Positions 23,797 to 64,000 of a DNA stretch of 64,000 nt are shown one piece after another. A model generated the notes under the pieces. It did no database searches. It worked only from the letters and a program-made list of their open reading frames with translations, and had not been told where the DNA came from. The translations under genes were made by a program, and so were the position numbers. The stretch spans positions 248,810,055 through 248,874,054 of the forward strand of contig NC_133622.1 in the NCBI RefSeq assembly GCF_048593235.1, read 5' to 3'. The DNA comes from Sminthopsis crassicaudata. Taxonomy: Eukaryota. Within the stretch, counting starts at the first letter, position 1. Each line of letters starts with the position of its first letter.

Positions 23797-24453
23797 GGGG
23801 GGACAGGTTTCACCCATTGGGTGGGGGCTAATGTACTTTCTTGGGGTACACTCCCCATGTCCCTCATAATATCCTCCAGCTCAAGAGAATTCCAGGATGC
23901 TGGGGGGGGGGGGGCAGGATTACAATTTATCTTGACTGAAAAGACCCATCGTTCATTTGCTGAATTTTAACAGGTCTGGGGAAGGGTAGCTCTGGGAAGG
24001 CAATCGGTTCATACCCTTCATATTCCCTTCTCACAACCATTCCCACTATGGAGGACAGGGCGGTGGGAAAGCTCCTGGACTAGGATGGGGGTTATCTTAA
24101 CTAGCCAGGTCCCACCCTAACGGCAAGCCCCCTCACTGATAGAGAGTTCAGAAAGGAATCGGGGAGCAGGACAAATGTCCTTAGTTTCCTCCAGAGCGGC
24201 TTTTATGCCCTGGCAGAGGGTCGCTTGTCCAAAAGCTGTGGGGAATGATTCGGGTCAGCTCTGGTTCGCACTAGCGCCTCCTCGGAGGACCCTCCTAGTC
24301 CAGAGACCCCGGTTTTGCAAGGAACAGGAGAGGGTCTGTCTGGCGAGGGGGATGGCGTTCATCTGGGGCTTTGCGGCTTTCTCAGCGCAGCGAGTCCAGC
24401 CCCCCACCTCCCCTCCCTGCTCTGAGCTGTCCTCCTGCTCTCTCAGAGCCAGG

Positions 24454-24918
24454 ATGAAAGGAGAGACCCCCGTGAACAGCACCATGAGCATCGGGCAAGC
24501 CCGAAAGCTGGTGGAGCAGCTCAAGATAGAGGCCAGCATGTGCCGGATCAAGGTGGGTGCGACCCTCCGCCTGCAACCGTGCGGCCGGGGGCGAGGTCCC
24601 TGGCCCTCGAGAGCCTTTCTTCCTTGGGGGGTGCCGGCCACTCTCGGCTTGGCTCTGGGAGGGGGGAGCTCCGTCCAGAAAGCTGGGGGAGGGATTGGCT
24701 GGCATTCCGGCCCGGGGAGCAGCCCTGGGGGGGCTTCGTGCCCTGGGGACCCCTGGCTCAGTCCGACCCCCTGCCGTGCCGGTGCCCAGGTGTCCAAGGC
24801 AGCTGCGGACCTGATGACATACTGCGATGCTCACGCCTGTGAGGACCCCCTCATCACTCCTGTGCCCACCTCGGAGAATCCCTTCCGGGAGAAGAAGTTC
24901 TTCTGCGCCCTCCTGTGA
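24454..24918 (+). CDS. GNG3: G protein gamma-3 subunit, 75 aa, exons 24454-24552 and 24790-24918
   Basis: [33 protein letters not shown] / [42 protein letters not shown]; CaaX; AATAAA at 25089-25094. Confidence 0.98.
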
Positions 24919-40400: not shown

Positions 40401-42641
40401 TCCCCACTGAAGCCACTGACTACCCTGGGGACACCACAAGAGACATACATTGGTATGGCCCTTGATACTTTTTTGGAGCTTCTGCAATTCATTTAAATCA
40501 GTGACCTGTAAGGAAGATGGAGTGCACACCTGATGCCTTCGAGACAGGGATTACATACTTGGCCACATCGCCCAGGGATTCCAGAGCTTGGTCCATAGCC
40601 CACAGGCTGTCCTTTGTTAGGATATGTTAGAAACAGTCCCCGACATTGAGACACCCTGGCCCCAAGGCTGCCCTTTTTCTCCCTTGCTTTCCTTCCCAAC
40701 GAGACTCTCTTGCCCGGCGTCTGCAGACCCTTGGCCAGGATGCTTTGTGATCTGACCATCTGCACTGGTCATGCTGCAAGGGCACAGTCAAGTCCCTTGA
40801 GGCCTAGATGACCTTTCACCCTCAGCTCTGGAATCCAAGAATCCTTTGCTTTCACGAGAAGAGCTTATGGGAAAGGCAGCAGGTTCCCGCCTCCTTCCCA
40901 GTTCCAGAACACCCCCATGCGATGTGTGTGAGAATCTAGGGCCGGGCTCACTCAGGATGCAAAGGCCAGAGTGCGGGGCCAGGGGGAACCTGAGGAGTGT
41001 TAGAGCAGGGGAGGCCCCAGGACACGTCCTTCTCCAGCTCCTTTTACAGATCAGGGAACTGAGGCAAACGGAGGCTGAGTGCCTTGCTCACCAGCCCCCG
41101 AGTCAGCCAGCTGCCTTTGCTGTTTCTGAGACCACCCTTCATGTTTTCAGATGGGGGTGGGTATTAAAGCCTTGTCCAGAAATTCACCAGGTGGTCCTCA
41201 CGCCTCTTTTCTCGGCCCCTTTAGCCTGTCTGCTTCAGATGGAGCCTGTGAACTATGAGCGAGTGAGAGAGTACAGTCAGAAGGTCTTAGAGCGCCAGCC
41301 TTCCAACGCCAAGGCCCTGTACCGGGCAGGGGTGGCCTCCTTCCACCTGCAGGACTACGACCGGGCCCGACGCTACCTTCAGGCCGCCACTGACCGGCAG
41401 CCAAAAGGTGAGCCAGAAGGAGCTGGGTGTGGGGGTGTGCAGTCGTGGGGCTCAAATGGCATCTGCCCAAAGGGAAAGTGAAGAGGATTTGAAGTCCTTG
41501 AGGCCCTGAATGGGGGGAGACTTGCATTCTCAAGGTGGATCAGTTTCCACTGTGCTTTCCTCTCCCCTTTCCCATCTGCCTTTGGGCAGTCTTATGGGCC
41601 TCTTGGTGACCATAGGAATGACCTCAAAAGAGGGTAGCCTTCCCAACAGCCAGCTTCTGTCGCTGGCGTCCGAGAGGGACCTCAGTACCGGTATCAGACT
41701 TTGGGCTCCGGGCCCGAGGGCTTTTCTTGACTTGAACCTCAGAGTTCGTCGGTGTAGGGAATGTCACTCCCCAGAGAGCAGATTTTCTCTTTCAACTATG
41801 ACCTGCAATCCAAAGTCTGAGACTTGCAGGGAAAGTAAAGTGACTTGACCAGGGTCACTCAACCAGGCAGGGCCAAAGGCTCAAAGCAGGGCTTCTGGAA
41901 TCCTGGGTTTGTCCTTTATCTACTACTCTGGTCTTTCTCTTTCTCTGAGAAACATAGGGAGAGGCTAGAACTCTGCTAACTCAGGGCTCTTTTGAAAGAT
42001 CTAGTCTGAATTAATGAAAAAGCAAACTAGAGGGCGTTCTTCAGATGAAGAGTTACTGTTTCAGAGGGAGGCCTCTAAATCTCTCAGACAAGCTCTCTTA
42101 GAAGGTCTGTTTCCCTGAATCTTACCTTGTACATAAAGGAAGCATCTAAGGTGTTTTAAAAGCTGTTTGCTTTTACATAATGAAAATATCTAGGAGATGT
42201 TCTTGCTTCCAAAACAAAGATCCAGCCTTCAGTCCTTAAAAAAATAAATAAATAAACAAACCTCCAGATTGATGAATTTGAATCCGATTTTTCTGGGCCC
42301 TACACAATCAGGATGCTCTTCTCTCTTAGAGCAGGGATGGGGACCTTTGTCCTGCCACGGTCCAGCTGGTTACCTCGAGCAGTGGGAGGTTTTATACCAG
42401 CTTCAGCTCATCTTCTAGGTTTGTCTCAGGCCTTGCAAGTTCCCTAGCCATCCTAGAGGACTGTAGGAAAGTTTGGGATTATTCAGATCTGCTCCCTCCT
42501 CCCTGGAGACTTGGATTACTTCATTTCTTTTTTTCTTCTTCCCAAGATGCCAACGTCCGGCGATACCTGCAGCGGACAGAATCAGAACTAAGCAGCTACC
42601 ACCAAAAGGAAAAACAGCTTTACATGGGCATGTTTGGTTAG
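37440..42641 (+). CDS. TTC9C: Tetratricopeptide repeat protein 9C, 171 aa, exons 37440-37677, 41225-41407, 42547-42641
   Basis: MERRLREAQQYKEEGNQRY...CYNNLA / ACLLQMEPVNYERV...RQPK / DANVRRYLQ...KQLYMGMFG*; 516 nt; AATAAA at 42910-42915. Confidence 0.97.
39625..40440 (-). mobile_element. LINE2 remnant in TTC9C intron 1
   Basis: aagcacctactacatgccagg...cctcagggagctcccagtc at the left end, purine-rich L2 body. Confidence 0.7.
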
Positions 42642-47008: not shown

Positions 47009-48418
47009 CTAGGAGGGGGCCGCCTCGGCGTCGGGCTTGCTGCGCTTGGCCAAGTCCTCGTTGTGGGCCTTGCGGATGTGGCGGTACAGGTCTCCCGACT
47101 GCGTATAGCTCCGCAGGCAGTAGCGGCACTCATAGGGCCGCTCCCTGGTGTGCACAGTCGCATGGCGCCTCAGGGTGTAGGAACAGGAGAAGGTCTTCCC
47201 ACACATCTTGCACGTGGGGACATCCTCCATGAAAACCCCGAAGCCCCCGGAGGCCACCTCGTACTCGGGGGGCAAGTAGAGAGACTCGGGCAGGCCGCTG
47301 TGTGCTGAGGCTGGAGGCGGGGTCACCAGCCCGGGGTGATAGTGCCCGGGGCCGGCTAACAGGTGGTAGGGAAGGTGAGCGTCAGGGGCCAGAAAGTGCT
47401 CAGCCAGGCCCCCCTCCTCGAGCCCAGGGCCCCCCGCAGCCGTGGCCTCTTCCGGTGCTTCAGGAGGGGCATAGCGGTTCCGACTGGCTACTCCCAGCAA
47501 GAAAAATCCCTCGGATGCCCGCGGCCTCTCCTCCGGCCCCTCGGCCTCCTCGTCGGAGATCACGATGGCCTCCACCTTCACCTGCACGGGCTCCGCCTCT
47601 CCCGGAGCTGGGGCTGGCACGGGAGGGTAGAAGCCCTCTACCGGCCCACTAGGTTCTCGTGGACCCCCGATCCCTGTGTTCTCAGGATCCACCTCCAGGG
47701 ACCCCGCGGGCTCCCCAGGGGCAGCCCCGACACTGAGGTTAAAGTAGGTGGGGGGCACTGCTTCCGTGGAGCTGGTGGGGCTGGAAAGGGAGCCATCCAC
47801 CGCGGGAGCCTCCATGCCAGGCTGGGTGGTGTCCGCCCCGTCGGGCCCTGGGGGCTCTTCGGCGTGAGGGGCGGCGGGCGGGGCAGGGGCCGGGGCGGGC
47901 CCTTTCCACTGGTCCTGGTCCCTCCAGCTGGGCGCGTCGGGGGGCGGGGGCACGGGCGCCAGGCCGCGGGAGGTGCTGGGCAGTGGCTCGGGGGTGGCCG
48001 GCTGCCCCCAGGGCTCCTCCTCCTTCTTGGTGCTGTCAGCCTCGGCCAGGGCCCTGGCCTGCAGCCGCCGCTTGCAGACCTTGACGATGTCATTCATGTG
48101 CAGGTAGCTGGCGGCGGCCAGCACGTCCTCCACGGGCGTGTCCCCGCGCAGGGCCAGCTGGCCGGCGTACATGAAGTCCAGCAGCAGCCCGAAGGCGGGC
48201 GCCGTGACGATCTCGTTGTGGATGCACACCAGGTCCCACTTGTCCAGGTCCCGCTCCTTGTAGAAGAGCTGGAAGAAGGGGCTGCACGAGGCCAGCACGG
48301 CCCGGTGCGCCTGGAACGGCGTGCTGCCCACCAGCACCGTGCAGTCGCACAGGAAGCCCTGGGAGCGCTGCTCCCGGAGGCTCTGCAACAGCTGCTCGCT
48401 GTGCCCGGGGAACTCCAT
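47009..48418 (-). CDS. ZBTB3: Zinc finger and BTB domain protein 3, 469 aa, single coding exon
   Basis: [29 protein letters not shown] domain; two C2H2 fingers [21 protein letters not shown] and [22 protein letters not shown]; acceptor at 48424 just upstream of ATG; probable upstream exon donor near 49030. Confidence 0.96.
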
Positions 48419-48479
48419 GGAACCTGGCGGGGGGACCCCGGGGCCCTGGGGAGAGAGGGAAGCCACAGGCCATGAGCAC

Positions 48480-50880: not shown

Positions 50881-53800
50881 ATGGCCACTGACCCACCACT
50901 GCAAGACTCGGAGGAGCTCCCATCAGAGGACCTGGCCCAAGGGGAGCTAAGTGTAAGAGTTGCCTCCCACCATCCACAGGGGCTGCTCCCCGGGGCTGCA
51001 GAGAGTGAGGTCCCCAAACTGAATGCGGACGGGGCTGGGACGTTTTAAAGCAAACACCTCTATTTTACAGAACGAGTCATAGACCGAGACGCTTCCTAGC
51101 TGCATAACCCTCCGTTATCTCATCTGTAGAATGAAGGGCTTGGGCCTTCAAGGTCCCTTCCAGTTCTAAATCCATGCCCTCTTGAGGCATTCATGACCCA
51201 CGACCCCCAGGGCAGCCCCCAGATCCCTGCGGACTAAAACGATTAGTACTAAAGCAAAGAAGTCCAGGGCAAAGGCAGGATTCAGGTCCTGTGACTCTAC
51301 CTCCAAGTCAGATCAAGCCAACAGGTCTTTAGAGGTCTGCCGCCCTACTGTGTGCCAGGCCCTGGGGACGCAAGGAAAGGCAAAAAAGATCTGTCCTCAG
51401 AAACCTCAGATGTAGAGACAACAAGCAAACAATTTGAGACAAACAAGTGATCTCCCCAATGAACTGGGAAGCCTCAATGGAGAGGGTCCTAAGACAAACA
51501 CACTGGGGCCTTTCGCAAGGAGAGTGCTCTTACACTTCCAAGTTCAGCATCCTTCATTACTGAGCCTTATTTTAAATTCCAACCGAGTATTTTGCAATTG
51601 AAATTGTTTTTCTTTCTTCCGTGGGGGGAAAAAAGAAAAGAAAAAAATGATGCCAGACAGTCTGTAGAGGGTAGCAGATAGTGGGGGAACTCTGGCTAAG
51701 GCATAAGCCCAGAAGAAACCCACTAACAATATCTGAACTTCGTGCTACCCCCTTGAGGTGGAAATTTGAAGATTTTGTAGTTTAAAAAAAATCCCCATCA
51801 ATCTATGGGAAAGAGACACCTTAAAACGGTTAGGGTTCCCATTGAGTATTTCGGCTTTGTTGAAGGCCTGCCTGCTCCCTCACCTGTTCTCACTTAATGG
51901 AAATGTGATCCACCGGTGTGGGTGGAACAGCGGCCCTTAGCAAGTGATAGAATTCAGGCCTTATTAGATATAGTGCAAGAGCAACTAAACCAAGGACACT
52001 TACAACCTTCTCTAAGTCCTTGGGATTCCCCTAAAAAGAGACCAGAGGGAAAGCCAAACCAGATCTTGTCAGCGGGGTTCCTCTGGGCTAAAGGGTCTTA
52101 TGCCTTACCCAGCATTCCCCCACTCTCTGCAGCCTCTACAACATTGACCAAAACAAACTGTCCTACTGGCCGTAGACCAGATGTGTCCTTCTGCCCCGAG
52201 TTCATCACCTGTCGGGCAGTAGGGAGGGGCACGTTTGTAGAGCTACGGCTGGTCCCTGCTGTGATCAGAATTCTTTCAAAGTTGTTTTTCTTTATAATCT
52301 TATATAAATGTTCTGCCGTGGTTGAAGCAGAAGGTAATCAGGGCCCGCACCTGGGTAAGGGTTGGGAAGGCGGACAGGTAGAACAGCAAGACCTGGTGGC
52401 AGGTTGACCCCTGGCTGTGGGGTTGGGGATGAAGGAAATTTGGGAAGAGTCCAGGATGAGCCTGGGAGTCCCCCCATGTCCTGACCCAACAGGAGAGCTG
52501 GAACTGAGGGGAAAGAGCAGGAGGAACTCTTCTCTGCTCAAGCCTTGCTTTTCTAGTCTCCAGACCCCCAGTTTGGCTTCAAGAGTTCTTGTCCCTCCTT
52601 TGCAAGATCCCTCAATGACTTAGGAAAGGAGATAGCAGCAAAAATCCCTCTCCATCGGCCAGGCTTTTCCCTTTCAGCCTAAATCTCCAACAGGAGGGAG
52701 ATGGCTAACCCAACAGGAGTCCATTCAGAGAGCAATGAAGATGGACAAGGGCGTGGATGACCACCCTTTGATCTTTGAGGCCTTCCCCCGCTGCCCCCAC
52801 GGCTCTCTTCACACCCTCCCTCCCTCCCAATCATGTTCTCAGTGATCTGTGTAGATGGTATGTTTTCTGCTAGAATATAAACTCCTTGAGGGCAGGGACC
52901 GTGCAGAGGACCTGACCCACCGAAGGTATCTGCTAAATGTTTGTTCCTTTGGATCGGATGCATGAGAATTGTTTGAGGGGTTAGTTTCCAGAGTTATAAG
53001 AATTAAGTTAGAGAAATGCAGGGAAATGAAAATTAAATTAGAAAAATGAAACTGAAACTTAAGAAATAGAGGCTGAGGAAGGAAACAAAACTACTAAAAG
53101 GACTGAACTAAGTCCAAACAAGATGAAGGCCGAGGGAAGAGGTAATGCTGTGACTGAAGGAAGAGACTCCAGACTAGTGTGGAAGAATTAGCCTCTCCAG
53201 ATAGGTTGTAAGCCTTGTAGTGCTCGGCCAAAGGGGAATCTGGAGGGACTTGCGTTTTGGATGGTAAAAAGACCACGTGTCTGTTGATAGCAAGTGTTCA
53301 AATTCTATAGGCTGGCCACCTCTGCAGTTGTGTAACTAAAGACTTCACCCCCTCCTAAGCCCAGCAGACTTATTTCTCACCAGTGTAGTTGGGGCAAAGA
53401 ACCTTCCTGACAATAGGAGCCATCAGAAAATAAGAAGCTGCCCTTTGCTTGAGAAGTAGCTGATTTCTCTTGACTTGAAGTCTTTAAGCAAAGACTGGAA
53501 GGCTCCTTGTTCACGGCCGGATGAGCCATCTCTGAGGTCCCTTGGGATTCTGGGAGTCTTGAGGGATGGCGAGTGGGGCCCCCGCTGCTCTTCAGAACAC
53601 AGGGACGGAGCTTTGCTCAGTCAAACAGACTCCTCTGGAGCCTCTTCAGTAACAGGGACCCATGTCTATCCTTCCCTGATATAATTTTAAAATATTTTAC
53701 CACCTCTTTTTCTACTTCTTTCCTAGCCCAGATATCCATCCATGCACCTACGAAGGCCGAAGGGATTGGAGTCTGAAAAGAGAAATCCACACTTGCCCTA

Positions 53801-56800
53801 TGACCCCGGTGCTCTGGAGAAGAGGGTAAGAGCCCCTGAGAACTCCCCTTCACCTCCCCCCCCCCCATGACTCCAGTAAGGTCGTCTTCTCAAGCTACAG
53901 GAACCTGGCCTGGGGAACGTTCTACCCAAACCCTAATAGAACCTAGCAGCCTCCAAGGTCCAGAAGAAGCTTGCAGTCTGATGGGGAAGGCAACATGTAT
54001 ACAAAACGGGCTGGATACAGGATAAATAGGAAACTATTAAGGTGCCAGGGTTAAGCAGGTGCCAGGGTTAAGCAGGGACCAGGGAAGGCCTCCCGTGGAA
54101 GGTAGGATCTTAACTGAGCTTAAAGGCTGAGGAGTCAGCAGTTGGGAGCAGAGAAGGGAGAGCCTTCTAGACCCAGGACTAGGGGACAGAGGTGGAGTCC
54201 TCAGTGGGGACTGGAGAGGCAAGGGGGCCTGGATTACTCTGAAGCACTTTGAACATTTTCTCTTTGATCCTGGAGACAGTAGGGAGTCTCTGGACTTTGA
54301 GGGGGAGGCGGGGATGGAGTGATGGGCCCTGGGCTCTAAGAAGCTCACTGATGGCAGTGGGGAATGTGCCAGGTGACCTGCCACAGCTCTTGCAGGGTGC
54401 GCCGGAGGGGCCGCGGGGGGCACGGCTAGGAGTTGGTCTGGGAGTTGAGACCATAATCTCCACTTGTGCCCGACACCGGCCGTGATGGCCCAATCACATG
54501 GTGGCAGAAGGACAGCTGAGCGGCTCCTAGGAAGAAGGCTCTCCCATTAGAGGAACTCACAAGTCCTGACCCCGCTTCCTCCTCTGGAAAACATTCCAGC
54601 CATCTTGTCCGGTGCTGGGGACACAGTCAGATAAAACGGCCCTGACCTCGGGGTCACACTAGAGGCAGAGATAGACATCCCACCCTATTGGCCCCGTCTG
54701 TCCTCCTGGGCCCTCTGGCCCCTGCCCGGCTCTGACTTGCAGGCTCTCCAGGGGCTTCCTCTGGCAGCCTTGTCGTCCTGGTCATGTGCCCTCCTGCTTG
54801 GGTTTCTCGGCATTGGGGCCCATGAGTCTTCCCAGACTTCTGAGTGAGGCTCCCACGTTCCCGTCCGGGCTTTGTCCATCTGTCCCCTTGGTTTCCAGCT
54901 CTTTGCCGCCATGAGTGCTTTTGTACAGATTGTCTTTTGTCTTTCTTGTGTCACCTCTCTGGGGCTCAGGCCTAGGGGGGCCGGTGGGAGGGCCTTTCCC
55001 TCAGTCCTGGCTGCTCTTCTGTGGCCCACAGCCCTCCCAGGGTCCCTCCACCGTCCAGCTCCTGCTCTCTGCCCTCTTCCTGCTGCTCCTGGGATTGGCC
55101 GTTTTGGGATTCTTGTCATCAGAGTTGCTGTGGCCCCCTTGGGCGGACAAGGCCAAGCCGGCGGCCTGGGACAGCCCTGCAGCCTGCAGGTGAGAGGCCC
55201 CTTGGGGAGGGGGGGATTTACCTTAAAAGCCTTACTGGAATACCTGCTAAAGAGGCTGCTTCCTGCCCCCTGGGACTCATGGATGATTGGGGGAATGGAG
55301 GGGCGATCCATGGAGGTGGTTTTTAAAAGTAGAGCATGATGGGAACCAGGGAAAAGTTCCAGAGAAGATGATCTAGGGCAAGGAAGGGGATGAGCATTTA
55401 TAAAGCACCTGCTGTGTGGCAGGCATTGTGCCGAGCACTTTACAAATATTACCTCACTGCACCTGGGAGGTAGGGGCCGGAATTATTCCCATTTTATAGC
55501 CGAGGACACTGAGGTAAAGCTGGAGTGGCTTGTCACGGCTGTGCCCAGCACAACACAAATGGGCTAGTGGCGGTTGGAGAGGAGGAGACGGGCTCATTGA
55601 GAGGAATCCTGCTGCTTCTGGATCGATCCCTCTGGGAGCCCGTTTTCTGGGAGCTAACTCTGAGGCTCTGCGAGCGCCCAGGGGCTCCATGGTGCGTAAA
55701 GCTCCAGTGCCCCAGAGGTGGTCGCAAGCTTAAATGCGCCTCGATTAGTCTTGGAGGAGGGGAACGTCCCGTTACCGGAGCCTCCGCACTCAGCCTGCTA
55801 GGAAGGGTCTGAGGCGGTTCTGGACCCAGGGCTTCCTGCCTCCCGGCGCGCTCTGTCCCCAAGCAGCAGGTTGAATCCTGCCTCGGACACAAACCTCCTC
55901 GGCTCTGTGGGCCCGTTTCCTCGCCCGTAAAATGAAGGGGCTGTGATCAGCTGGCGGATGGCCCCTTGGTGCGAAGGGCTGGGGGGGGGGGGGTGGCGAT
56001 GGCCCGTCCTGGGCAGGGGGCGGCAAGCGGCTCACTGTGGCCGTCATACGGAAGGCATGATGGGCATCCGCACTCCAGGAGGTGGGAGAGTGGGCCAGCT
56101 ATCGGGAAGAAGGAAGACTCGGCCAGGCAGTGCAGGGAGAAGGCGAGGGGGGGTGGGAGCACTAAATGGGGGAGGGAGAGGAGGGTGCCTTCTCTTGTCC
56201 TCCTCCTCATCCTGGCCCTCCCTGACTCTGCAGTCTGGTGCTGGCTGAGAGCATCCCAGAGGGCATGAGCTTCAGCCCGGGCAGCCCCCAGCATATCTCC
56301 ACCCACCGGGCCTGGCTCCAGCTGATCCAAAGAGCCCAGAGCCAAGTTGACATCGCAGCCTACAACTTCACTTTGCGGTCCAGAGCCACTGGCAGTGCCC
56401 ACCCCTCAGGCTGGCAGGTGAGGAGTTATCAAAAGAGAACGGGGGCAAAAGAATCGCATCGGAACGGGCGAGGAAGGAGGCCAGGCTGAAAGGAGCGGGG
56501 CCGCTGAACGGCTCTGGAGGGCACTGCACCCTCCTGCCAGCTCGGGCTTTTGCTGCCAGCCTCCGCCCTTTGCAGTCCTCCCTCCCCCTGCCCCGTTCTG
56601 CTCATCCACCGTCTCTCCGGCCACACGCTCATTCCCAGTTCCCTCTTCCCCCCTTCTGGGGTCCGGGTCTCCTAGTGCTCCCCCCAGCCCCCAGCTCCAT
56701 GGCCAGTCACTGCCTGTTCTCCTTTCTCCTCCCCTGGAAGACACTTGATTTTTTTCTGTACTTAGTCTCCCCCCCTCCCCCCAAGACCTTTCCTCAAGGC

Positions 56801-59800
56801 TGGTACAGTGTAGAAAGCCTGGTCAGGAAGACTTCCCTTCATTGGGCCCTCACACTCAGGAGGGGGGAGTGTGTCAGAGAGACAGAGACAGAGAGAGACA
56901 CACGGAGACGGGGAGAGACAGAGACACGCTTCAGCACATAGTAGCCACTTAATAAATGCTTTTCCCTTCTCTTTTCTCTTGTCAAAGGTTGAATGTCTAA
57001 TAAGTGGCAGAACTCGCATCCCTGACCTGAAGGAAAGGAGGAAGGGAGGGAAAGGAAGACGGGGAAGGAAGGGGAAAGGGAGGGAGGAGGGAATTTCACT
57101 CTGTCTGACTTAACATAGTATAGGCCCCACCTCTGAGAGTTGTTGCGGGCCCCAAATGAGGTATTTGCCCCTGGCACACAGTAGGTACTATATAAGTTCT
57201 TGTTTCTTTCCCTCCCCCCTCCCCTTTCCCCTTCTCCCCCCTCCCCCCTCCGCTTCTCCTCCTCTCTGCGCACTCAGGACTGGAGTGTTGGGCTGCCCTG
57301 CCCTCCCTGCCATTTTGGGCTCCTCCTTCCTGAGCAGTGAAGGTGCTCCCTCGGACTCTTGCCCCCTGCCTCTGGAGGACCAGAGGCTGCTAACTGTCTC
57401 CATTCCTCATCGCCTTCGCCCTCTCCTTTACCAAAGCTGCCCCTCTGTCTCCCCAGTTTCTCCCTTTCCATCACGGGCGGCGCTCCGCAGGATGCTGTAG
57501 GTCCCGTGCCTGGTGCTCACCTTGGCAGCCTCCCTTCTTCCTCGGGGCCTGCCCTGACTGGCACCCACGCCCATGGCTTGCCATAGCATAAAACTGCCAA
57601 GTGGTGTCTCTCCTGGCATCCTGTGTGGCTCCGAGTCCGGACCTGGCCAGGAAATCCTGACCCGACTTTGGAAGCTCGCCCATGTGGCGGAGGCTCCTGT
57701 GAGGGGGCCCTCGGTTGCCTCGCTCTCTAGAACCATCCACTAAGGTGGCGAGGGGCGACCATCCCCGGTAGGAGGAGGACCCCGGGATCCTTGAAGAGGT
57801 TGCAGCCCAGAGGGGCGCAAGAGGAGGCTGCGCCAGGCAGGAGCCCTGGACACGCTCTGGGGAGGCCTGGCTTCCGGCAACAGACCGAATCTCCTTTCTT
57901 TGTCCTGGACTGCAGGGCCAAGAGATCTTGGATCGCCTGCTGTCCCTGCCCGGCCGGGGGGTTCGGTTACACGTGGCCATGAACAGTCCCCAGCCCTCGG
58001 ACATTGACGCGGATGAGCTGGGCAGGCATGGTGAGCGGGGGGAGGGGCCGGCCCTGGAGAAGAGGGGGAGAGAGACTGGAGAAGCTCTAACTGACCCCCC
58101 CCCCCCCCTGTGCAGGAGCCAAAGTGACCCCAGTGCAGCTGGAGCAGCTGACAGGAGGCATCGTCCACTCCAAGTTCTGGGTGGTGGATGGCCGGGATGT
58201 CTATGTGGGCAGCGCCAACGCGGATTGGCGGGCCCTCACCCAGGTAGGGGGTGGCAGAGAGGGGGAGGCGGAGGCAGGCCAGGTCACAAGGCCTCGGGCA
58301 CAGCGCCCCCTCACCTTCCGTTCAGATCAAGGAGCTAGGAGCTGTCCTGTACGACTGCAGCCCCGTAGCCCAAGACCTGCTCTCCATCTTCAACATGTAC
58401 CAGGCCCTCGGAGGGCCCAGGGCCGTCCTGCCCACCTCCTGGCCGCCTCACTTCTCTGCTGGCTCCAGCCTCCAGAAGCCCATCCGCCTCCATCTCGATG
58501 GTCACCCAGCTGATGTGTACCTCTCAGTGAGACACCTGCCTCCCCTCCCCCCACCCCAGCCATACTGGGAGGCCGGTTCTGTCCTGCTGATACAATGGGG
58601 GGGGGCCCAGGGAGCTCTGGAAACCCCTCCCGTACTTAGCACCCGGGGGATCCTAGGCGGGTCATCGCCTCTCCACAGGCCTCGGTGTTCTCATCTGTAG
58701 AATGAGGGGTTGGCCCCCGAGGCCTCTGAGGGCCCCCGGGCTGAGGCAACAAAAGGTCTGAAACACTAGACATGAAGGCCAGGGCACAAGTGCAGAATTC
58801 GCCGGGGCCTTTATTGACAACTAGAGGTTTTAGACCAAATGAAGCCGTAAAATAGGCCCCAGGAGTGGCTGAGGTGAACCGGCTTTGTGGGAGCACAAAA
58901 GGAGTCAGGAAAAGGGGTTTTAACAGTTAACAGGGGAAAGGCGAGTCCCTCGGTGACGCTCCCAGGTAGCCAGGAGAAAGGCTCCATGAGGCGGCTCAGC
59001 ACTGATTGGCTGCTCGCTAAATCCGTAGAGAAGTTTAATCCCCCAAAAGGGTTACCTGGAACAAGGGGAAAGACACGGGCAGAGCAGCACCAAGACCCAC
59101 TAACCCACAAGGGAGAACAAGTGCCCAGAGGCTAAACTCTGAGTCTCCTGCAGATAGGCCCCTGGCTGTAGCACGCAGTATGTGGGGATCCACGGCAGGG
59201 AGGCCGGATGCAGGGGACAGCAGAGGAGCCGGCATCTTCCCCAGACAGCCGTGGGGGAACAGCAGTGAGTGACTGGCCAGTTGGGCAGCCACAGGGAGGG
59301 AGAGGGGAGAGCTGGGAGAACAGTTAGATGGGGATGAGGGCTACCTGGGGCCGGCAGCTGTGGAGCGAGGGAGAATTAGTAACAGCCTCAAGAGACCGCT
59401 TCCGAGGTTACAAAATACTTCTAGGAAACAGACCCTCAGACCAAGCCTGTGGGACAGGTGATTTTACAGATGGGGCAACTGAAGCTGGGAGGGTCAATGA
59501 CTTATCTGGGATCACACAGCTAATACGTGTCCAAGGCAGAATGTGAAAAGCCAGTGTGGGCAGGGCGTTGGCCAGCCAGGATCACTGGGCGTCACCAGGG
59601 GCCCCAGAGAGACTGCGGCTTCTGCCAGGCCTTCCTCTCTCTGCCCGGCAGCTTCGGGGGAAAGTGGGAAGCAGGGTGGCTGCCCTTGTCCATGGTTGGG
59701 GCTGGAAAGGGACCAGCAGGGAGAGGCGCCAGCAAGGATCACTGGAGGGCTGAGGCCGGGGAAGGGGGCCAGAGAGCCCAGGAAGGATGGGCTGGGGGCA

Positions 59801-62757
59801 CCAGCAGGCAAAGGGGAAGATGGGGCAGTTCTGACTGCGGACGATCTGGGGATCTGCTTCGTTTGAGGGAGAGCAGTATAGATGGGAATCCTTTCCTATG
59901 AGGGCAAGCACAGAGTGGGACAGGGAATGACCTGGGGGCCGGTGACAAACAGCTTGCAGGCACCTGAGGCTAGTACCTCACAGAGGAGGCATCCTGAGTA
60001 AAGGGGGTTCAGGTTAGGAGGCCATGGGAAGCCGGAGCATGCTGGCTCCTAGTGCCACCCTGCCTTTGCCCCCCAGTCGTTTCTCCCCCCCCAGTCGTTT
60101 CTCCCCCCCCAGTCGTTTCTCCCCCCCCAGTCGTTTCTCCCCCCCCAGTCGTTTCTCCCCCCCCCAGTCGTTTCTCCCCCCCCCAGTCGTTTCTCCCCCC
60201 CCCAGTCGTTTCTCCCCCCCCCAGTCGTTTCTCCCCCTCCCAGTCGTTTCTCCCCCCCCCCATGAGCTCACATGCTGTACCCAACTTTGTGGCTACAGAG
60301 CTCCCCCCCAGCCCTGTGTGGCCCTGGCCGCACGTCGGACCTCCAGGCCATCCTCAGCACCATAAGCCAGGCTCGCAAGTTCATCAAGGTCTCTGTCATG
60401 GATCTGATGCCTCAGTGCATGTTTTGCCAGCCCAAGAGGTGAGGAGACCCGGGCCTGGAGCCGCCCTTTTCACGCCGGCCTCCCTGGCCCGAGATCTTAG
60501 TCTGTCCTGAACCTGCTGTTCCTGCAGCTCCTGGGCCTCTGCCCTGTCATTGCTCCTCTGCCACCCCCGGAAAGCAGGCCTTTGTGCCTTTGTCCTTGGA
60601 GTGGGAGGGTCTGGGAGCTCCTGGTCTCGAGGGCTTCTCCCGAGCCCTCCAGCGACGTCCCCCGTGCCCCTCCCAGGTTCTGGCCAGAGCTGGACTCGGC
60701 CCTGCGGGCCGCGGCCTGTGACCGGCGGCTTCCTATCCAGCTGCTGATCAGCTGCTGGCGTCAGTCGGATCCAAATATGTTCATCTTTCTGGAGTCCCTG
60801 AACATCCTGGCCCAGCCGCCTCTGTCCTGCCCTCTCCGTGTGGTGAGTTTCCTTTACAGAAGCACTTTGTAGCCTTGTCAGCCCCCCCCCCCCCAACCCT
60901 GGGAGGAAGGGGCTCACTTAGCTAGTAAATGAGTTTCAAGGCCGGGCAGTCCAATAAACGCTTCTAAATGCCCACCGTGTCCCGGGCTGGGAAGCTCCGG
61001 GGCTCTGCAGTCGGCAAAGGGCCAGGCCTAGAGTCAGGAAGACTCCCCTTCTGAATTCCAATGCAGCCTCGGACACCCTGTCTGTCTTAGTTTCCCCATC
61101 GGTCGAATGAGCTGGAAAAGGAAATGGCAAATCACCCCAGAATCTCTGCCAAGAAAACCCCATGGGGGGAGTCACAGGGAGATTTGGGCCAGACTGAAAA
61201 CAATGAACTGCACGTCTTGGGCCCTGTGCTAAGCACTGGGGATACAAGAGGCAAAGGCAGCCGCTGCCTCAGGGAGGTTACGGTGGGGCTGGGGAAGAGA
61301 ACGGGTGAAGGGCCACTTGTTCTCCTTCTGGCGACCGAGGCACAGAGCGGGGGTAACCCCTCGGGCTGCATCTGCACTCCGGCCAAATGAATTCCTAGTT
61401 GTCTCCTTCTGCATATTCGGTCCACGGTCTCCTTCATCTTCAGACTTTTGGTTTCTCTCGGCACTGATCACAGGTCTAAAGCTACTCTGAGTTTCAACCA
61501 GCATCTATTAAGCACCTACTATTTGTGGTGTAGGAACCCAGAACATAAAACTCTGGGAAAGTGGCCTCGGTTTTAAGGGGAGAGGGGACGGGGAGCAATT
61601 ACAGGGGTGCCGTCGCCTCTTCCGGCCCCAGGAAGCCCTCCGTGGCCAAGGGGCCGCTCCGATCTGAATCGGGAATGGATTTTGATAATGGGTGTGCCCG
61701 GCACTGGACACCCCCCCCCCCCAAAGATGGAAAGCCCTCTCTAGGCTCCTTCAGAAGGCGGGTGCCAGCTTAATAGGGAGGGCTCAGAGGCGCTTCGGAG
61801 CTCCCTTTTACAACGGGGTCTCCAGAAACAGCTGTCTGTTATATCGGCTGAAAACCCAGGGCTGTGCCAAGAGTGATCAAGGAGCAGTGCCAGCCGGGCA
61901 GCAGGGTGGTACAGTGGTCAGAGCACCAGCCCAAAGTTGGTCTTGGGCACTTCACATTTCCTGGCTGTGGGACCCTGGGGAAGTCACTTATGGGCAGTGC
62001 CAGCCTGGAGGGAGTTTCCTCTCTATTAGAGGAACTCCACAGAGCAAATATAAGGGGATTTCATGGTGGAGGCACGAGCGCCGAGGGGAAGGAGTGATGG
62101 AACAGCCGGTCCACGAGCATTTATTAAGCGCCGACTGTGTGCAGACTTTGTGAGAGGGCGGCCGGTGGAGAGTCTGGAAAACCTGACATGAGGCCCTTCC
62201 TTGGCGGACTCCCTGGGGCCATTTCTTCAGCGGCAGATGACGGTCCCGTGGGTCCTCCAGAAAACCAGAGTGTGTGCACTAACAACCCCCCCCCCCCCCC
62301 CCACAGAAGCTGTTCTCGGTGCCCGTGAGCCGGGACCAAAGGCAGATCCCGTTTGCCCGGATGAATCACAACAAGTTCATGGTCACTGACCAGGCTGCCT
62401 ACATCGGTGAGTGGGCCGGGCTCTGGGCTCCTGGGGGGTTCTTGGGCGGGCAGGGGCCGCGCCTCCAGAGCCAGCCCCGCCGGACGTGCCCCCGCCGCCC
62501 CGGGCCTGCTGGGGTCTGCGGGAAGCGCTCGCCGTCAGCCTCCTCTCGTCCCCCCAGGAACCTCCAACTGGTCCCACGACTACTTCCTTCGCACCACGGG
62601 CGTGGCGCTGGTGATCGCGCGGCCCCCAGGAGCCCAGATGCTGCCGGTGCAGCGGGAGCTTCAGGCGGTCTTTGAGCGAGACTGGGCCTCTCCCTACGCC
62701 CTGCCCCTGAGCCCGCGCCCCCCCTGCGCTGCCCCGGGCCCGGAGGGGACCAGCTAG
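50881..62757 (+). CDS. PLD3/PLD4/PLD5-family phospholipase D / 5'-3' exonuclease-like type II membrane protein, ~484 aa, 10 coding exons
   Basis: Exons 50881-50952 (inferred first coding exon), 55041-55189 (TM), 56234-56417, 57916-58030, 58116-58243 (HSKFWVVD...GSAN), 58326-58526, 60299-60438, 60677-60842, 62307-62406 (HNKFMVTD), 62558-62757 (GTSNWS...RDWASPY); all GT-AG, phases concordant, 1455 nt, no internal stop; AATAAA at 62889-62894. Confidence 0.93.
51090..51180 (+). mobile_element. MIR3-like SINE fragment
   Basis: ctcatctgtagaatgaaggg...aaggtcccttccagttctaaatccatg. Confidence 0.6.
51700..52035 (+). mobile_element. Betaretrovirus-like ERV pro-pol junction fragment
   Basis: IPINLWERDTLKRLG at 51791-51835 (protease C-terminal NLWGRD motif) and WVEQRPLASDRIQALLDIVQEQLNQGHLQPSLSPWDSP from ~51919 (RT N-terminus); no LTR seen. 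Confidence 0.8.
53985..54500 (-). mobile_element. LINE2 remnant
   Basis: Purine-rich L2-like text (ctttgatcctggagacagtagggagtctctgg); contains a 17-bp tandem duplication at 54040-54073. Confidence 0.55.
55380..55560 (-). mobile_element. L2 end / MIR fragment
   Basis: aagcacctgctgtgtggcaggcattgtg...cccattttatagccgaggacactgagg...gctgtgcccagc. Confidence 0.6.
60068..60260. repeat. 18-19-bp C-rich minisatellite, 10 copies, ending ~40 nt upstream of a PLD-like acceptor
   Basis: (cagtcgtttctc(7-9)) x10; agtcg at 60075, 60093, 60111, 60129, 60147, 60166, 60185, 60204, 60223, 60242. Confidence 0.97.
61060..61210 (+). mobile_element. MAR1/MIR 3' fragment
   Basis: gagctggaaaaggaaatggcaaatcaccccagaatctctgccaagaaaacccc. 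Confidence 0.75.
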
Positions 62758-63379
62758 TTGGGGATCGAGCCTCGGGGACTGGCCGGACTCGTTTTAGCGC
62801 CCCGGCCAGCCTGGAACTGGGGGGAGGGAGGGGCCGGTCCCTCCCTCGGGACCCTCCCCTGCCAAGCGGGGAAAGCCACAGATACCGCAATAAAGATGCC
62901 CGCGGCCAGGCGGATGCGGAGCAGTGGGGGCTCCCGGCCGGCTCCGGGGGGAGCACAGAGGGAAAGGGGAGGAGGGGGAGGAGAGACCGGCGGTGAGACC
63001 GAAGCCCTCGGGGCCGCCCTCCCCGGGGGCACTCGGCCGGGAGCCGGGGAGAAGTCGGGCAGACCGAGCCAGGTGCAAACGCAGAGACTTGGGCTTGGCC
63101 AATAATGAAAACTCTTGTGACTGAAGTTTGGTGTTTTCTTCTCCTGGGGGGGGACAGACGGAAAACGAGGAGTCCCGGGAGACTAGCTGCCTGAGGAGTT
63201 TGTAGGTGTAATCCCAAAGGAGTAGGGAGGCGTGGGAGTAGTTAGAACCGGCATCTGGCCCTGGGATTGGAGGACTGGCCGGAGCACGTGCCCCGCCCAC
63301 TGGCGGGTTTCTTTAGGCCCCACAGAAGTCCACACACCCACCCAAAATAATCCTGCACGTGCACAGGGGAGGGGGCTGG

Positions 63380-63815: not shown

Positions 63816-64000
<185 letters not shown>

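What the first reader, a model, noticed from the sequence alone, without database searches (positions are those of the whole stretch)
50881..62757. Intact PLD3/4/5-family gene between ZBTB3 and POLR2G: candidate fourth ohnologue absent from the human locus
Seen: ten GT-AG exons splice into an uninterrupted ~484-aa type II membrane protein with a poly(A) signal. Exon sizes 184, 128, 201, 140, 166 and 100 nt and their phases match human PLD3 as I recall them, so this is an intron-bearing paralogue, not a retrocopy. Known: human PLD3 is on 19q13, PLD4 on 14q32, PLD5 on 1q43, and to my knowledge no PLD gene lies between ZBTB3 and POLR2G. Neighbouring genes belong to the same 1q/11q/14q/19q paralogon (HNRNPU/UL1/UL2, TTC9/9B/9C, ZBTB18/42/3, GNG4/2/8/3). 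Inference: this is the missing fourth 2R copy, perhaps orthologous to teleost pld7, kept in marsupials and lost in the human lineage. PLD3/PLD4 degrade ssDNA/RNA in endolysosomes to tune TLR9/TLR7 and make BMP lipid, so marsupials may have an extra nucleic-acid-sensing regulator.
Basis: partly seen in the sequence, partly recalled or inferred. Interest (0 to 1): 0.92.

Follow-up and report, generated by a model that had tools for sequence, protein, structure and literature searches.

The report
Marsupial copy of vertebrate PLD7 gene
The fat-tailed dunnart keeps an intact, selectively constrained gene of the PLD3/PLD4 lysosomal nuclease family next to POLR2G; it is the marsupial counterpart of the little-studied fish gene pld7, which placental mammals appear to have lost, and databases already list it as "PLD3-like".

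Summary
A GT-AG spliced PLD3/PLD4-type gene lies on the + strand at 50881-62757, between a BTB-zinc-finger ORF (ZBTB3-like) and the POLR2G start. It has two complete HxKxxxxD motifs.

The window matches Sminthopsis crassicaudata. NCBI already annotates this gene as "5'-3' exonuclease PLD3-like" (520 aa, 11 coding exons).

ML trees place it, with devil, opossum and monito del monte orthologues, inside a 100/99-supported clade. That clade holds reptile, caecilian, newt, coelacanth, shark and gar genes and teleost "pld7". It is separate from true PLD3, which marsupials also have, and from eutherian PLD4 (AU test p = 0.00013).

The position just upstream of POLR2G is shared by devil, monito del monte, opossum, tortoise, gar and tarpon. 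Exon sizes 115 and 100 nt match PLD7, not PLD4.

dN/dS among four marsupials is 0.11-0.21. The predicted fold matches PLD3/PLD4 structures (TM 0.92-0.94).

No eutherian, monotreme, bird, crocodilian or frog member appeared in the protein search.

Orthology to pld7 and retention in marsupials are supported. A 2R origin and nuclease function remain inferred.

This is a new member of a known kind, of moderate interest.

Other readers of this scan noted the same stretch twice (s1-181925, s1-192246).

The parts
50881..50952 (+). Coding exon 1 (72 nt, start ATG; acidic cytosolic N-terminus)
   Evidence: exact match to P0001; donor GT. Devil exon 1 is also 72 nt.
53727..53825 (+). It encodes the cytosolic 'LRRP' motif.
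   Evidence: AG/GT borders. A 99-nt exon is also in the devil and monito del monte models. The motif is in all four marsupials. It resembles the conserved [YF]V[RK]L[KR]RL motif of non-mammalian PLD7 tails; the homology is inferred.
55032..55189 (+). Coding exon 3 (158 nt): transmembrane anchor and start of the luminal part
   Evidence: AF2 helix at residues 64-88. Hydrophobic core at 55047-55115.
56234..56417 (+). Coding exon 4 (184 nt). It holds the marsupial-specific Y-to-N change at the human PLD3 Tyr126 position (codon 56364-56366, N-F-T sequon).
57916..58030 (+). Coding exon 5 (115 nt, the PLD7-typical size)
   Evidence: 115 nt in tortoise, catshark, gar and tarpon PLD7; 121 nt in marmot PLD4.
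58116..58243 (+). Coding exon 6 (128 nt) with the first HxKxxxxD motif (58166-58189)
   Evidence: Pfam PLDc E = 1.4e-8; translation.
58326..58526 (+). Coding exon 7 (201 nt), PLDc_3 region
60299..60438 (+). Coding exon 8 (140 nt)
60677..60842 (+). Coding exon 9 (166 nt)
   Evidence: PLDc_3 E = 3.7e-8.
62307..62406 (+). Coding exon 10 (100 nt, the PLD7-typical size) with the second HxKxxxxD motif (62367-62390)
   Evidence: 97 nt in marmot PLD4.
62558..62757 (+). Coding exon 11 (197 nt + TAG stop)
62889..62894 (+). AATAAA poly(A) signal, 132 nt after the stop
47009..48466 (-). Upstream neighbour: BTB + C2H2 zinc-finger ORF (ZBTB3-like), divergently oriented
   Evidence: Pfam BTB E = 2.6e-24. Same neighbour in devil, monito del monte and tortoise.
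63816..63827 (+). Downstream neighbour: start codon of POLR2G ('MFYH')
   Evidence: An Rpb7-domain gene of 172 aa follows the PLD gene in devil, opossum, monito del monte, tortoise, gar and tarpon.

Best explanation
This is the dunnart orthologue of vertebrate PLD7, the gene that fish annotation calls pld7 and that other annotations call 'PLD3-like' or 'PLD4-like'. PLD7 is an old paralogue of PLD3 and PLD4 whose ancestral place is immediately upstream of POLR2G. Shown: the gene is intact, has 11 GT-AG coding exons, has evolved under purifying selection in four marsupials, and encodes a protein with one N-terminal membrane helix. The rest of the protein folds like the PLD3/PLD4 luminal domain and keeps both catalytic His/Lys pairs, the Glu229-equivalent proton relay, and most phosphate- and base-contacting residues. 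Inferred: like PLD3 and PLD4, it is a type II glycoprotein of endolysosomes whose luminal domain uses a phosphohistidine intermediate. It would remove nucleotides from the 5' end of single-stranded DNA or RNA, and perhaps carry out the transphosphatidylation that makes BMP lipid. Marsupials carry a derived form. The long disordered cytosolic tail of other vertebrates is cut down to about 60 residues. The tyrosine that holds the substrate 5'-OH in human PLD3 is replaced by asparagine in an N-x-T sequon, so 5'-end specificity may differ. The lineage leading to placental mammals appears to have lost the gene.
For: Identity: P0001, NCBI 'PLD3-like' of Sminthopsis crassicaudata, is identical over all shared exons. 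Phylogeny: the PLD7 clade has 100/99 support and contains teleost pld7; the marsupial group (100/100) sits in its amniote part (96/84 and 97/89). An AU test rejects a clade of marsupial gene plus eutherian PLD4 (delta lnL 45.9, p = 0.00013). True PLD3 of bilby, possum, devil and platypus falls in the PLD3 clade. Synteny: ZBTB3(-)/PLD/POLR2G(+) in devil, monito del monte and tortoise. PLD/POLR2G in opossum. GPR137(-)/PLD7/POLR2G/EEF1G in gar and tarpon. A pompano GWAS block lists gpr137, pld7 and syvn1 together (PMC12903247). Exon sizes 184/115/128/201/140/166/100 are identical to tortoise and catshark PLD7; tarpon differs only at 204 for 201, and gar also fuses 140 and 166 into one 306-nt exon. 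Constraint: NG86 dN/dS is 0.11-0.21 over 409 luminal codons in six marsupial pairs. Fold: AF2 pLDDT 85.4; Foldseek TM 0.92-0.94 and rmsd 1.3-2.0 A to PLD3 and PLD4 structures. Residues: H201, K203, D208, N218, E229, F335, H416, K418, N432, Y437 and T441 equivalents are kept (roles from PMC12749308). Expression hint: the Antechinus 'PLD3' is 520 aa, transcript-supported, and has human PLD4 as its best hit (PMC9631953). It is probably this gene (inference).
Against: No enzymatic, localisation or RNA-seq data exist for any PLD7. The marsupial stem branch is long (0.82-0.88 substitutions per site). Eight positions that are otherwise at least 92% conserved are changed in all four marsupials, including Y126N and H211D in human PLD3 numbering. 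The dunnart alone has H369Q, and the devil alone W367S, at residues whose mutation lowers PLD3 activity. Activity or specificity may therefore have shifted. Membrane orientation is assumed from PLD3/PLD4. Absence from eutherians rests on annotated proteins only, not on genome searches. PLD5 and non-eutherian PLD4 are missing from the trees, and eutherian PLD4 sits on a long branch that joins hagfish (long-branch warning).
Confidence: 0.8

Rival explanations
1. The marsupial gene is the orthologue of eutherian PLD4. On this view PLD4 is simply the eutherian PLD7, moved to a new locus and fast-evolving, so nothing was lost in the human lineage.
For: Human PLD4 scores slightly higher than PLD3 against the protein (402.9 versus 384-391 bits; exon 7: 54.7 versus 44 bits). 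NCBI names several fish and turtle PLD7 genes 'PLD4' or 'PLD4-like'. No clearly non-eutherian PLD4 turned up in any search. No marsupial PLD4 could be fetched.
Against: An AU test rejects marsupial gene plus eutherian PLD4 as a clade (p = 0.00013). PLD4 stays outside the 100/99 PLD7 clade with or without hagfish. PLD4 has exons of 121 and 97 nt where every PLD7 has 115 and 100. Marmot PLD4 lies beside a 5855-aa giant gene, not POLR2G. From recalled human maps, that neighbour is AHNAK2, a paralogue of AHNAK, which I recall lying beside EEF1G near POLR2G. That pattern fits duplication of a block rather than a jump.
Confidence: 0.07
2. It is a recent marsupial duplicate, or a relocated copy, of PLD3.
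For: Databases call it 'PLD3-like'. The antechinus genome paper treated what is probably this gene as PLD3.
Against: It falls in the PLD7 clade, not the PLD3 clade (99/93). The PLD3 clade contains bilby, possum, devil and platypus PLD3, so the devil has both genes. Identity to PLD3 is only 44-50%. The locus is shared with tortoise, gar and tarpon PLD7.
Confidence: 0.02
3. The gene is intact by chance but is decaying or unexpressed, like the copies presumably lost in other lineages.
For: Long marsupial stem branch. Lineage-specific changes at substrate-contact residues. The N-terminal part evolves nearly neutrally (dN/dS 0.6-0.75). No hits came from diprotodont marsupials or the bilby.
Against: Open frames and all splice sites are kept in four marsupials whose pairwise dS reaches 0.69, with luminal dN/dS of 0.11-0.21. 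All catalytic residues are kept. A transcript-supported 520-aa model in Antechinus is probably the same gene.
Confidence: 0.03
4. The protein is expressed and constrained, but in marsupials it has moved to a different substrate or role. Examples are 5'-phosphorylated nucleic acids, a lipid-only transphosphatidylase, or a non-catalytic binder.
For: Tyr126 is universally conserved and contacts the substrate 5'-OH in PLD3. It is Asn in all four marsupials, within an N-x-T sequon. The marsupial group has eight group-specific changes at conserved columns, more than any other four-sequence group compared (0-5). The cytosolic tail is truncated.
Against: The nucleophile and acid histidines, both lysines, the Glu229 equivalent, both asparagines and the stacking aromatic residues are intact. 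The fold is indistinguishable from PLD3/PLD4.
Confidence: 0.15

Closest known systems
Teleost pld7 (phospholipase D family member 7) and its unnamed orthologues in gar, sturgeon, bichir, sharks and rays, coelacanth, caecilian, newt, tuatara, squamates and turtles
   Same: Same clade (100/99 support). Same position directly upstream of POLR2G. Same core exon sizes, including the diagnostic 115 and 100 nt. Both motifs are HxKxxxxD.
   Different: Non-mammalian PLD7 proteins are 600-930 aa, with a 200-450 aa disordered cytosolic extension that carries short conserved motifs and has no Pfam match. Marsupials have about 60 cytosolic residues and keep only one of those motifs. Marsupials also have a long stem branch and the Y126N change.
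PLD3 (lysosomal 5'-3' exonuclease; structures 8V5T, 8Q1K, 8V05)
   Same: Type II architecture, PLDc/PLDc_3 domains, fold TM 0.91-0.94, 44-45% identity, same catalytic and most substrate-contact residues.
   Different: A separate clade, and marsupials have their own PLD3. In motif 2, mammalian and bird PLD3 end in Glu while this protein ends in Asp. Asp is the ancestral state, seen in all PLD7, in fish and squamate PLD3 and one of the two frog PLD3 examined, in hagfish and in a snail. It is a structural residue, not a catalytic one. Tyr126 is replaced.
PLD4 (5'-3' exonuclease of dendritic cells and other immune cells; structures 8V08, 9VBJ)
   Same: Fold TM 0.93, 46-48% identity, and the highest sequence score of any solved protein. 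Phe at the Tyr411 stacking position, as in PLD4.
   Different: An AU test rejects orthology. Exons of 121 and 97 nt instead of 115 and 100, and a different locus.
Poxvirus K4 nicking-joining enzyme and F13 (viral members of the same fold)
   Same: Detected by sequence (271 bits) and by fold (TM 0.86-0.89).
   Different: 21-25% identity for F13; viral proteins with other roles. They are only distant relatives.

Membership tests
PLD3/PLD4-type PLD-superfamily proteins | Two HxKxxxxD/E motifs in one chain | tested here: met
   H-S-K-x4-D at 58166-58189 and H-N-K-x4-D at 62367-62390.
PLD3/PLD4-type PLD-superfamily proteins | PLDc_3 / PLDc_2 domain architecture | tested here: met
   Exon-wise Pfam hits. 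PF13918, PF13091 and PF00614 are precomputed for P0001.
PLD3/PLD4-type PLD-superfamily proteins | Bilobal luminal fold superposable on solved PLD3/PLD4 | tested here: met
   AF2 pLDDT 85.4; Foldseek E = 5e-58, TM 0.92-0.94, rmsd 1.3-2.0 A.
PLD3/PLD4-type PLD-superfamily proteins | Single N-terminal membrane anchor (type II) | tested here: inconclusive
   One hydrophobic helix at residues 64-88, ahead of the catalytic domain. Orientation and lysosomal cleavage are not testable here.
PLD3/PLD4-type PLD-superfamily proteins | Substrate-contact residues of the 5' exonuclease site (human PLD3 Y126, N218, E229, N328, F335, W367, H369, Y411, N432, Y437, T441) | tested here: inconclusive
   N218, E229, F335, W367, Y411 (as Phe), N432, Y437 and T441 are kept. 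Y126 is Asn in all marsupials. H369 is Gln in the dunnart. N328 is Asp, as in most PLD7 (roles).
PLD3/PLD4-type PLD-superfamily proteins | Acid 5'-3' exonuclease activity on ssDNA/ssRNA, or BMP synthase activity | not testable with these tools
   Needs the recombinant protein.
PLD7 orthologue group | Groups with named teleost pld7 to the exclusion of PLD3 and PLD4 | tested here: met
   100/99 support in two careful ML trees; AU test against PLD4.
PLD7 orthologue group | Located directly upstream of POLR2G on the same strand | tested here: met
   Window, devil, opossum, monito del monte, tortoise, gar and tarpon.
PLD7 orthologue group | Core exon sizes 184/115/128/201/140/166/100 | tested here: met
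PLD7 orthologue group | Long disordered cytosolic N-terminal extension with conserved short motifs | tested here: not met
   The marsupial tail is about 60 aa. tblastn found no trace of the upstream motifs between 48 and 56 kb. Only the LRRP-type motif exon remains. This is a derived state inside the clade and does not count against orthology.
PLD4 orthologue | Clade with eutherian PLD4, at the PLD4 locus | tested here: not met
PLD3 orthologue | Clade with mammalian PLD3 | tested here: not met
Processed retrocopy or pseudogene | No introns, or a disrupted frame, or neutral evolution | tested here: not met
   Ten introns, open frame, dN/dS 0.11-0.21.

The most novel reading that the evidence does not exclude
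PLD7 is a third catalytically active endolysosomal PLD-type nuclease or BMP synthase of most jawed vertebrates. Its long cytosolic tail would give it separate trafficking or regulation. Marsupials, the only mammals seen here to keep it, have remodelled it: a short tail, and Asn (possibly glycosylated) in place of the 5'-OH-binding tyrosine. It would then accept different 5' ends and give marsupials a nucleic-acid-clearing or TLR-tuning activity that placental mammals lack.
Probability: 0.15. Interest if true: 0.65.

Novelty: new member of a known kind. Interest (0 to 1): 0.45.

Why it matters
PLD3 and PLD4 are under intense study as the lysosomal 5' exonucleases that limit TLR9 and TLR7 ligands, and as BMP synthases, with links to Alzheimer's disease and autoimmunity. 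All of that work uses human and mouse, which lack this gene.

A third paralogue with an intact active site has sat beside POLR2G from teleosts to marsupials and is conserved from sharks to marsupials. It is unstudied and inconsistently named: PLD3-like, PLD4, PLD4-like, pld7.

Recognising it matters in three ways:
- It fixes annotation. The antechinus Alzheimer-gene survey probably analysed this gene in place of PLD3.
- It gives a natural comparison for what PLD3 and PLD4 had to take over after the loss.
- It points to a mammalian model, dunnart or opossum, in which the gene can be knocked out.

It is an ordinary case of differential paralogue loss, not a new kind of system.

Tried and rejected
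- PLD5 could not be retrieved. The "fourth of four" claim is therefore untested.
- I looked for non-eutherian or marsupial PLD4 among the exon-search representatives. The candidates were mis-spliced eutherian PLD4 models or unnamed fragments.
- A frog PLD3 query did not bring up marsupial PLD3. A mole-rat PLD3 query did.
- Isoform X2 proteins of opossum, monito del monte and gar were not on record for contig look-up. Isoform X1 proteins worked.
- The catshark and caecilian loci showed no neighbours within 10 kb, or gave no DNA.
- Literature searches for PLD7 or "family member 7" found only one gene-list mention. No paper on PLD3/4/5 phylogeny covered it.
- Pfam found nothing in the cytosolic tails. 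It also found nothing in the long antisense or intronic ORFs at 51898-52404, 54685-55311 and 62399-63217, which I treat as chance ORFs in GC-rich DNA.
- N-terminal dN/dS is unreliable. The opossum X1 model starts with a 531-nt exon and aligns poorly there, and one pair saturated.
- The IQ-TREE codon-model estimate was not obtained, because the script stopped at that error.
Full report
**What is in the sequence**

Three-frame translation of 50.5-63 kb on the + strand shows a colinear series of open segments resembling PLD3. The exon sizes are 184, 115, 128, 201, 140, 166, 100 and 200 nt.

These are preceded by an exon encoding a hydrophobic helix (55032-55189) and a start exon (50881-50952). 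Joined, they give an open frame of 487 aa with a TAG at 62755-62757. An AATAAA lies at 62889. Exon-wise Pfam scans hit PLDc, PLDc_2 and PLDc_3. There are no N runs in the gene.

**Whose gene it is, and the true model**

I searched the 201-nt exon against 1.84 billion representative proteins. It returned one 100% match, P0001 of 520 aa. The word-indexed search names P0001 as NCBI "5'-3' exonuclease PLD3-like [Sminthopsis crassicaudata]". The window is therefore fat-tailed dunnart, and the gene is already annotated.

P0001 equals my model except for 33 extra residues. An exact protein-to-genome mapping places them in a 99-nt AG/GT exon at 53727-53825. The devil and monito del monte models have a 99-nt exon at the same place. 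The peptide motif it encodes is present in all four marsupials, including the shorter opossum isoform.

**Neighbours**

- A BTB + C2H2 ORF lies at 47009-48466 on the - strand.
- A TPR ORF lies at 40846-41481, and a G-gamma ORF at 24175-24918.
- "MFYH" at 63816 fits a GNG3 - TTC9C - ZBTB3 - PLD - POLR2G order.
- In the devil, the annotated genes around the orthologue are TPR, BTB-ZF(-), PLD(+) and an Rpb7-domain gene(+).

**Orthology**

The best hits to P0001 are:

| Species or group | Identity |
|---|---|
| Devil | 83% |
| Monito del monte | 77% |
| Opossum | 76% |
| Turtles | 53-60% |

Next come tuatara, squamates, a caecilian, sharks and rays, coelacanth, gar and sturgeon, and teleost proteins named pld7. 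True PLD3 of birds, frogs and fish, and eutherian PLD4, score lower. A newt PLD7 turned up among the representatives.

A careful ML tree (68 rows, LG+C20+F+G4) puts the four marsupial proteins (100/100) inside a 41-row clade with 100/99 support. That clade holds all of these "-like" proteins and pld7. The marsupials are sister to the sauropsid members (96/84).

I then added true mammalian PLD3: bilby, brushtail possum, devil, platypus, rat, leopard and elephant. These fall in the PLD3 clade (99/93). The window protein stays in the PLD7 clade (100/99; amniote part 97/89). The devil thus has both PLD3 and this gene.

An AU test rejects a clade of the marsupial gene plus eutherian PLD4 (delta lnL 45.9, p = 0.00013). 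With hagfish removed, PLD4 remains on the PLD3 side of the 99% split.

Many species have one member in each clade: gar, bichir, tarpon, a caecilian, an electric ray, several turtles and a gecko.

**Synteny and gene structure**

| Species | Gene order |
|---|---|
| Tortoise | ATG8-family gene, BTB-ZF(-), PLD7(+), POLR2G(+), EEF1G(+) |
| Gar | SYVN1, GPR137(-), PLD7(+), POLR2G(+), EEF1G(+) |
| Tarpon (gene named pld7) | Same order as gar |
| Opossum, monito del monte | POLR2G directly downstream |

A fish review lists gpr137, pld7 and syvn1 together in one pompano association block (PMC12903247).

Marmot PLD4 instead lies next to a 5855-aa giant gene.

Tortoise and catshark PLD7 share the core exon sizes 184/115/128/201/140/166/100 with the window. 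Tarpon has 204 in place of 201. Gar has 204 and a single 306-nt exon in place of 140 and 166. Marmot PLD4 has 121 and 97 where PLD7 has 115 and 100.

Tree, locus and exon structure agree.

**Is it functional?**

I extracted the four marsupial coding sequences by exact mapping. Over 409 ungapped luminal codons, pairwise dN/dS (Nei-Gojobori) is 0.11-0.21, with dS up to 0.69. The short N-terminal part gives 0.6-0.75, but it aligns poorly.

An AlphaFold2 model built on a 43-sequence alignment has pLDDT 85.4 and pTM 0.80. It shows a helix at residues 64-88 and a confident domain from residue 103 onward. Foldseek matches PLD3 and PLD4 structures at E of about 1e-56, TM 0.92-0.94 and rmsd 1.3-2.0 A. 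Poxvirus F13 and classical PLDs lie far behind. By sequence, human PLD4 (403 bits) and PLD3 (384-391 bits) are about equally close.

I took residue roles from the cryo-EM study of PLD3 and PLD4 (PMC12749308) and mapped them onto the alignment.

- **Kept:** H201, K203, D208, N218, E229, F335, H416, K418, N432, Y437 and T441 equivalents are all present. Y411 is Phe, as in PLD4.
- **Motif 2 acidic residue:** it is Asp here and Glu in mammalian and bird PLD3 and in PLD4. Asp is also found in every PLD7, in fish and squamate PLD3 and one of the two frog PLD3 examined, in hagfish and in a snail. It is the ancestral state, and that paper describes the residue as structural. The other scan note that stresses "two full HKD motifs" (s1-192246) is correct but not distinctive.

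**What is derived in marsupials**

- The marsupial stem branch is long (0.82-0.88 substitutions per site).
- Eight columns that are at least 92% conserved elsewhere are changed in all four marsupials. Other four-sequence groups have 0-5 such changes.
- The most notable change is at human PLD3 Tyr126, which bonds the substrate 5'-OH in a tight pocket. It is Asn in all four marsupials, within Y-N-[F/V]-T, an N-glycosylation sequon. The window codon is 56364-56366.
- The dunnart alone has Gln at H369, and the devil alone Ser at W367.
- Non-mammalian PLD7 proteins carry a 200-450 aa disordered cytosolic extension. It has a few conserved short motifs and no Pfam match. Marsupials keep only about 60 residues. 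tblastn found no remnant of the other motifs between ZBTB3 and the membrane-anchor exon.

**Distribution**

In the search with P0001, no eutherian, monotreme, bird, crocodilian or frog protein fell in the PLD7 score range or clade. PLD3 of those groups was found readily. No diprotodont marsupial or bilby PLD7 appeared either, although their PLD3 did.

This is absence from annotated proteins, not from genomes.

**Literature**

The held library has no study of PLD7.

The antechinus genome paper reports a transcript-supported "PLD3" of 520 aa. Its best human hit was PLD4, and it failed the reciprocal-best-hit test (PMC9631953). True marsupial PLD3 is 486 aa, and the dunnart PLD7 is 520 aa. That entry is therefore probably PLD7. 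This is an inference, because I could not compare the sequences.

**Not settled**

- The 2R claim is untested. I could fetch no PLD5 and no non-eutherian PLD4. Eutherian PLD4 sits on a long branch that pairs with hagfish (flagged by the tree tool). The rooting relies on one snail sequence.
- The paralogon argument fits my recollection of human maps, but only the window's own genes and the marmot PLD4 neighbour were checked here. I recall HNRNPU/UL1/UL2, TTC9/9B/9C and ZBTB18/42/3, plus AHNAK near EEF1G, AHNAK2 beside PLD4 and PRX near PLD3.
- Activity, localisation and expression in the dunnart are inferred.

**Verdict**

The gene is real, intact and constrained. It is the marsupial orthologue of PLD7. 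It is already present in public annotation under misleading names. It is worth a note for people who work on PLD3 and PLD4 and for marsupial genome annotation, but it is not a new kind of system.

Noticed in passing
window 56361-56372: In all four marsupial orthologues the otherwise invariant Phe-Tyr pair (human PLD3 F125-Y126; Tyr126 binds the substrate 5'-OH) reads Tyr-Asn. This creates an N-x-T glycosylation sequon at the mouth of the active site.
   Followed up: partly
window 60069-60260: A tandem array of a 19-bp C-rich unit (10.3 copies, 98% matches) lies in the intron, ending 39 bp before the 140-nt exon.
   Followed up: no
P0163, P0005, P0301, P0029 (N-terminal 200-400 residues): Non-mammalian PLD7 proteins carry a long disordered cytosolic extension with three short conserved motifs: an R-R-S-[ST]-R-L type, a Q-P-R-x-S-I-[KR]-[AT]-H-[KR] type, and a [YF]-V-[RK]-L-[KR]-R-L type. 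There is no Pfam match. Marsupials retain only the last, in the 99-nt exon.
   Followed up: partly
PMC9631953, Table 3: The Antechinus stuartii 'PLD3' used in an Alzheimer-gene survey is 520 aa, has a Trinity transcript, and has human PLD4 as its best hit. It is probably PLD7 rather than PLD3, since true marsupial PLD3 is 486 aa.
   Followed up: partly
one search hit list: PLD7-clade hits came from dasyurids, opossums and Dromiciops only. None came from koala, wombat, possum, kangaroo or bilby, although possum and bilby PLD3 are in the same database. This may reflect further losses inside marsupials, or annotation gaps.
   Followed up: no
alignment A1, human PLD3 positions 367 and 369: The dunnart alone has Gln for His369, and the devil alone has Ser for Trp367. 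Both residues contact substrate phosphate in PLD3, and mutating them lowers activity.
   Followed up: no
Public names for one orthologue group are inconsistent: PLD3-like, PLD3, PLD4, PLD4-like, pld7 and 'uncharacterized'. Sometimes different names are given to isoforms of one gene, as in Salvelinus alpinus and Acipenser ruthenus.
   Followed up: no
window 51898-52404 (+), 54685-55311 (-), 62399-63217 (-): Long ORFs lie inside introns or antisense to exons of this GC-rich gene. None has a Pfam match, so they are treated as chance ORFs.
   Followed up: yes
window 24175-24918 (+), 40846-41481 (+): Upstream of ZBTB3 there is a G-protein gamma (GGL) ORF and a TPR ORF.
   Followed up: partly
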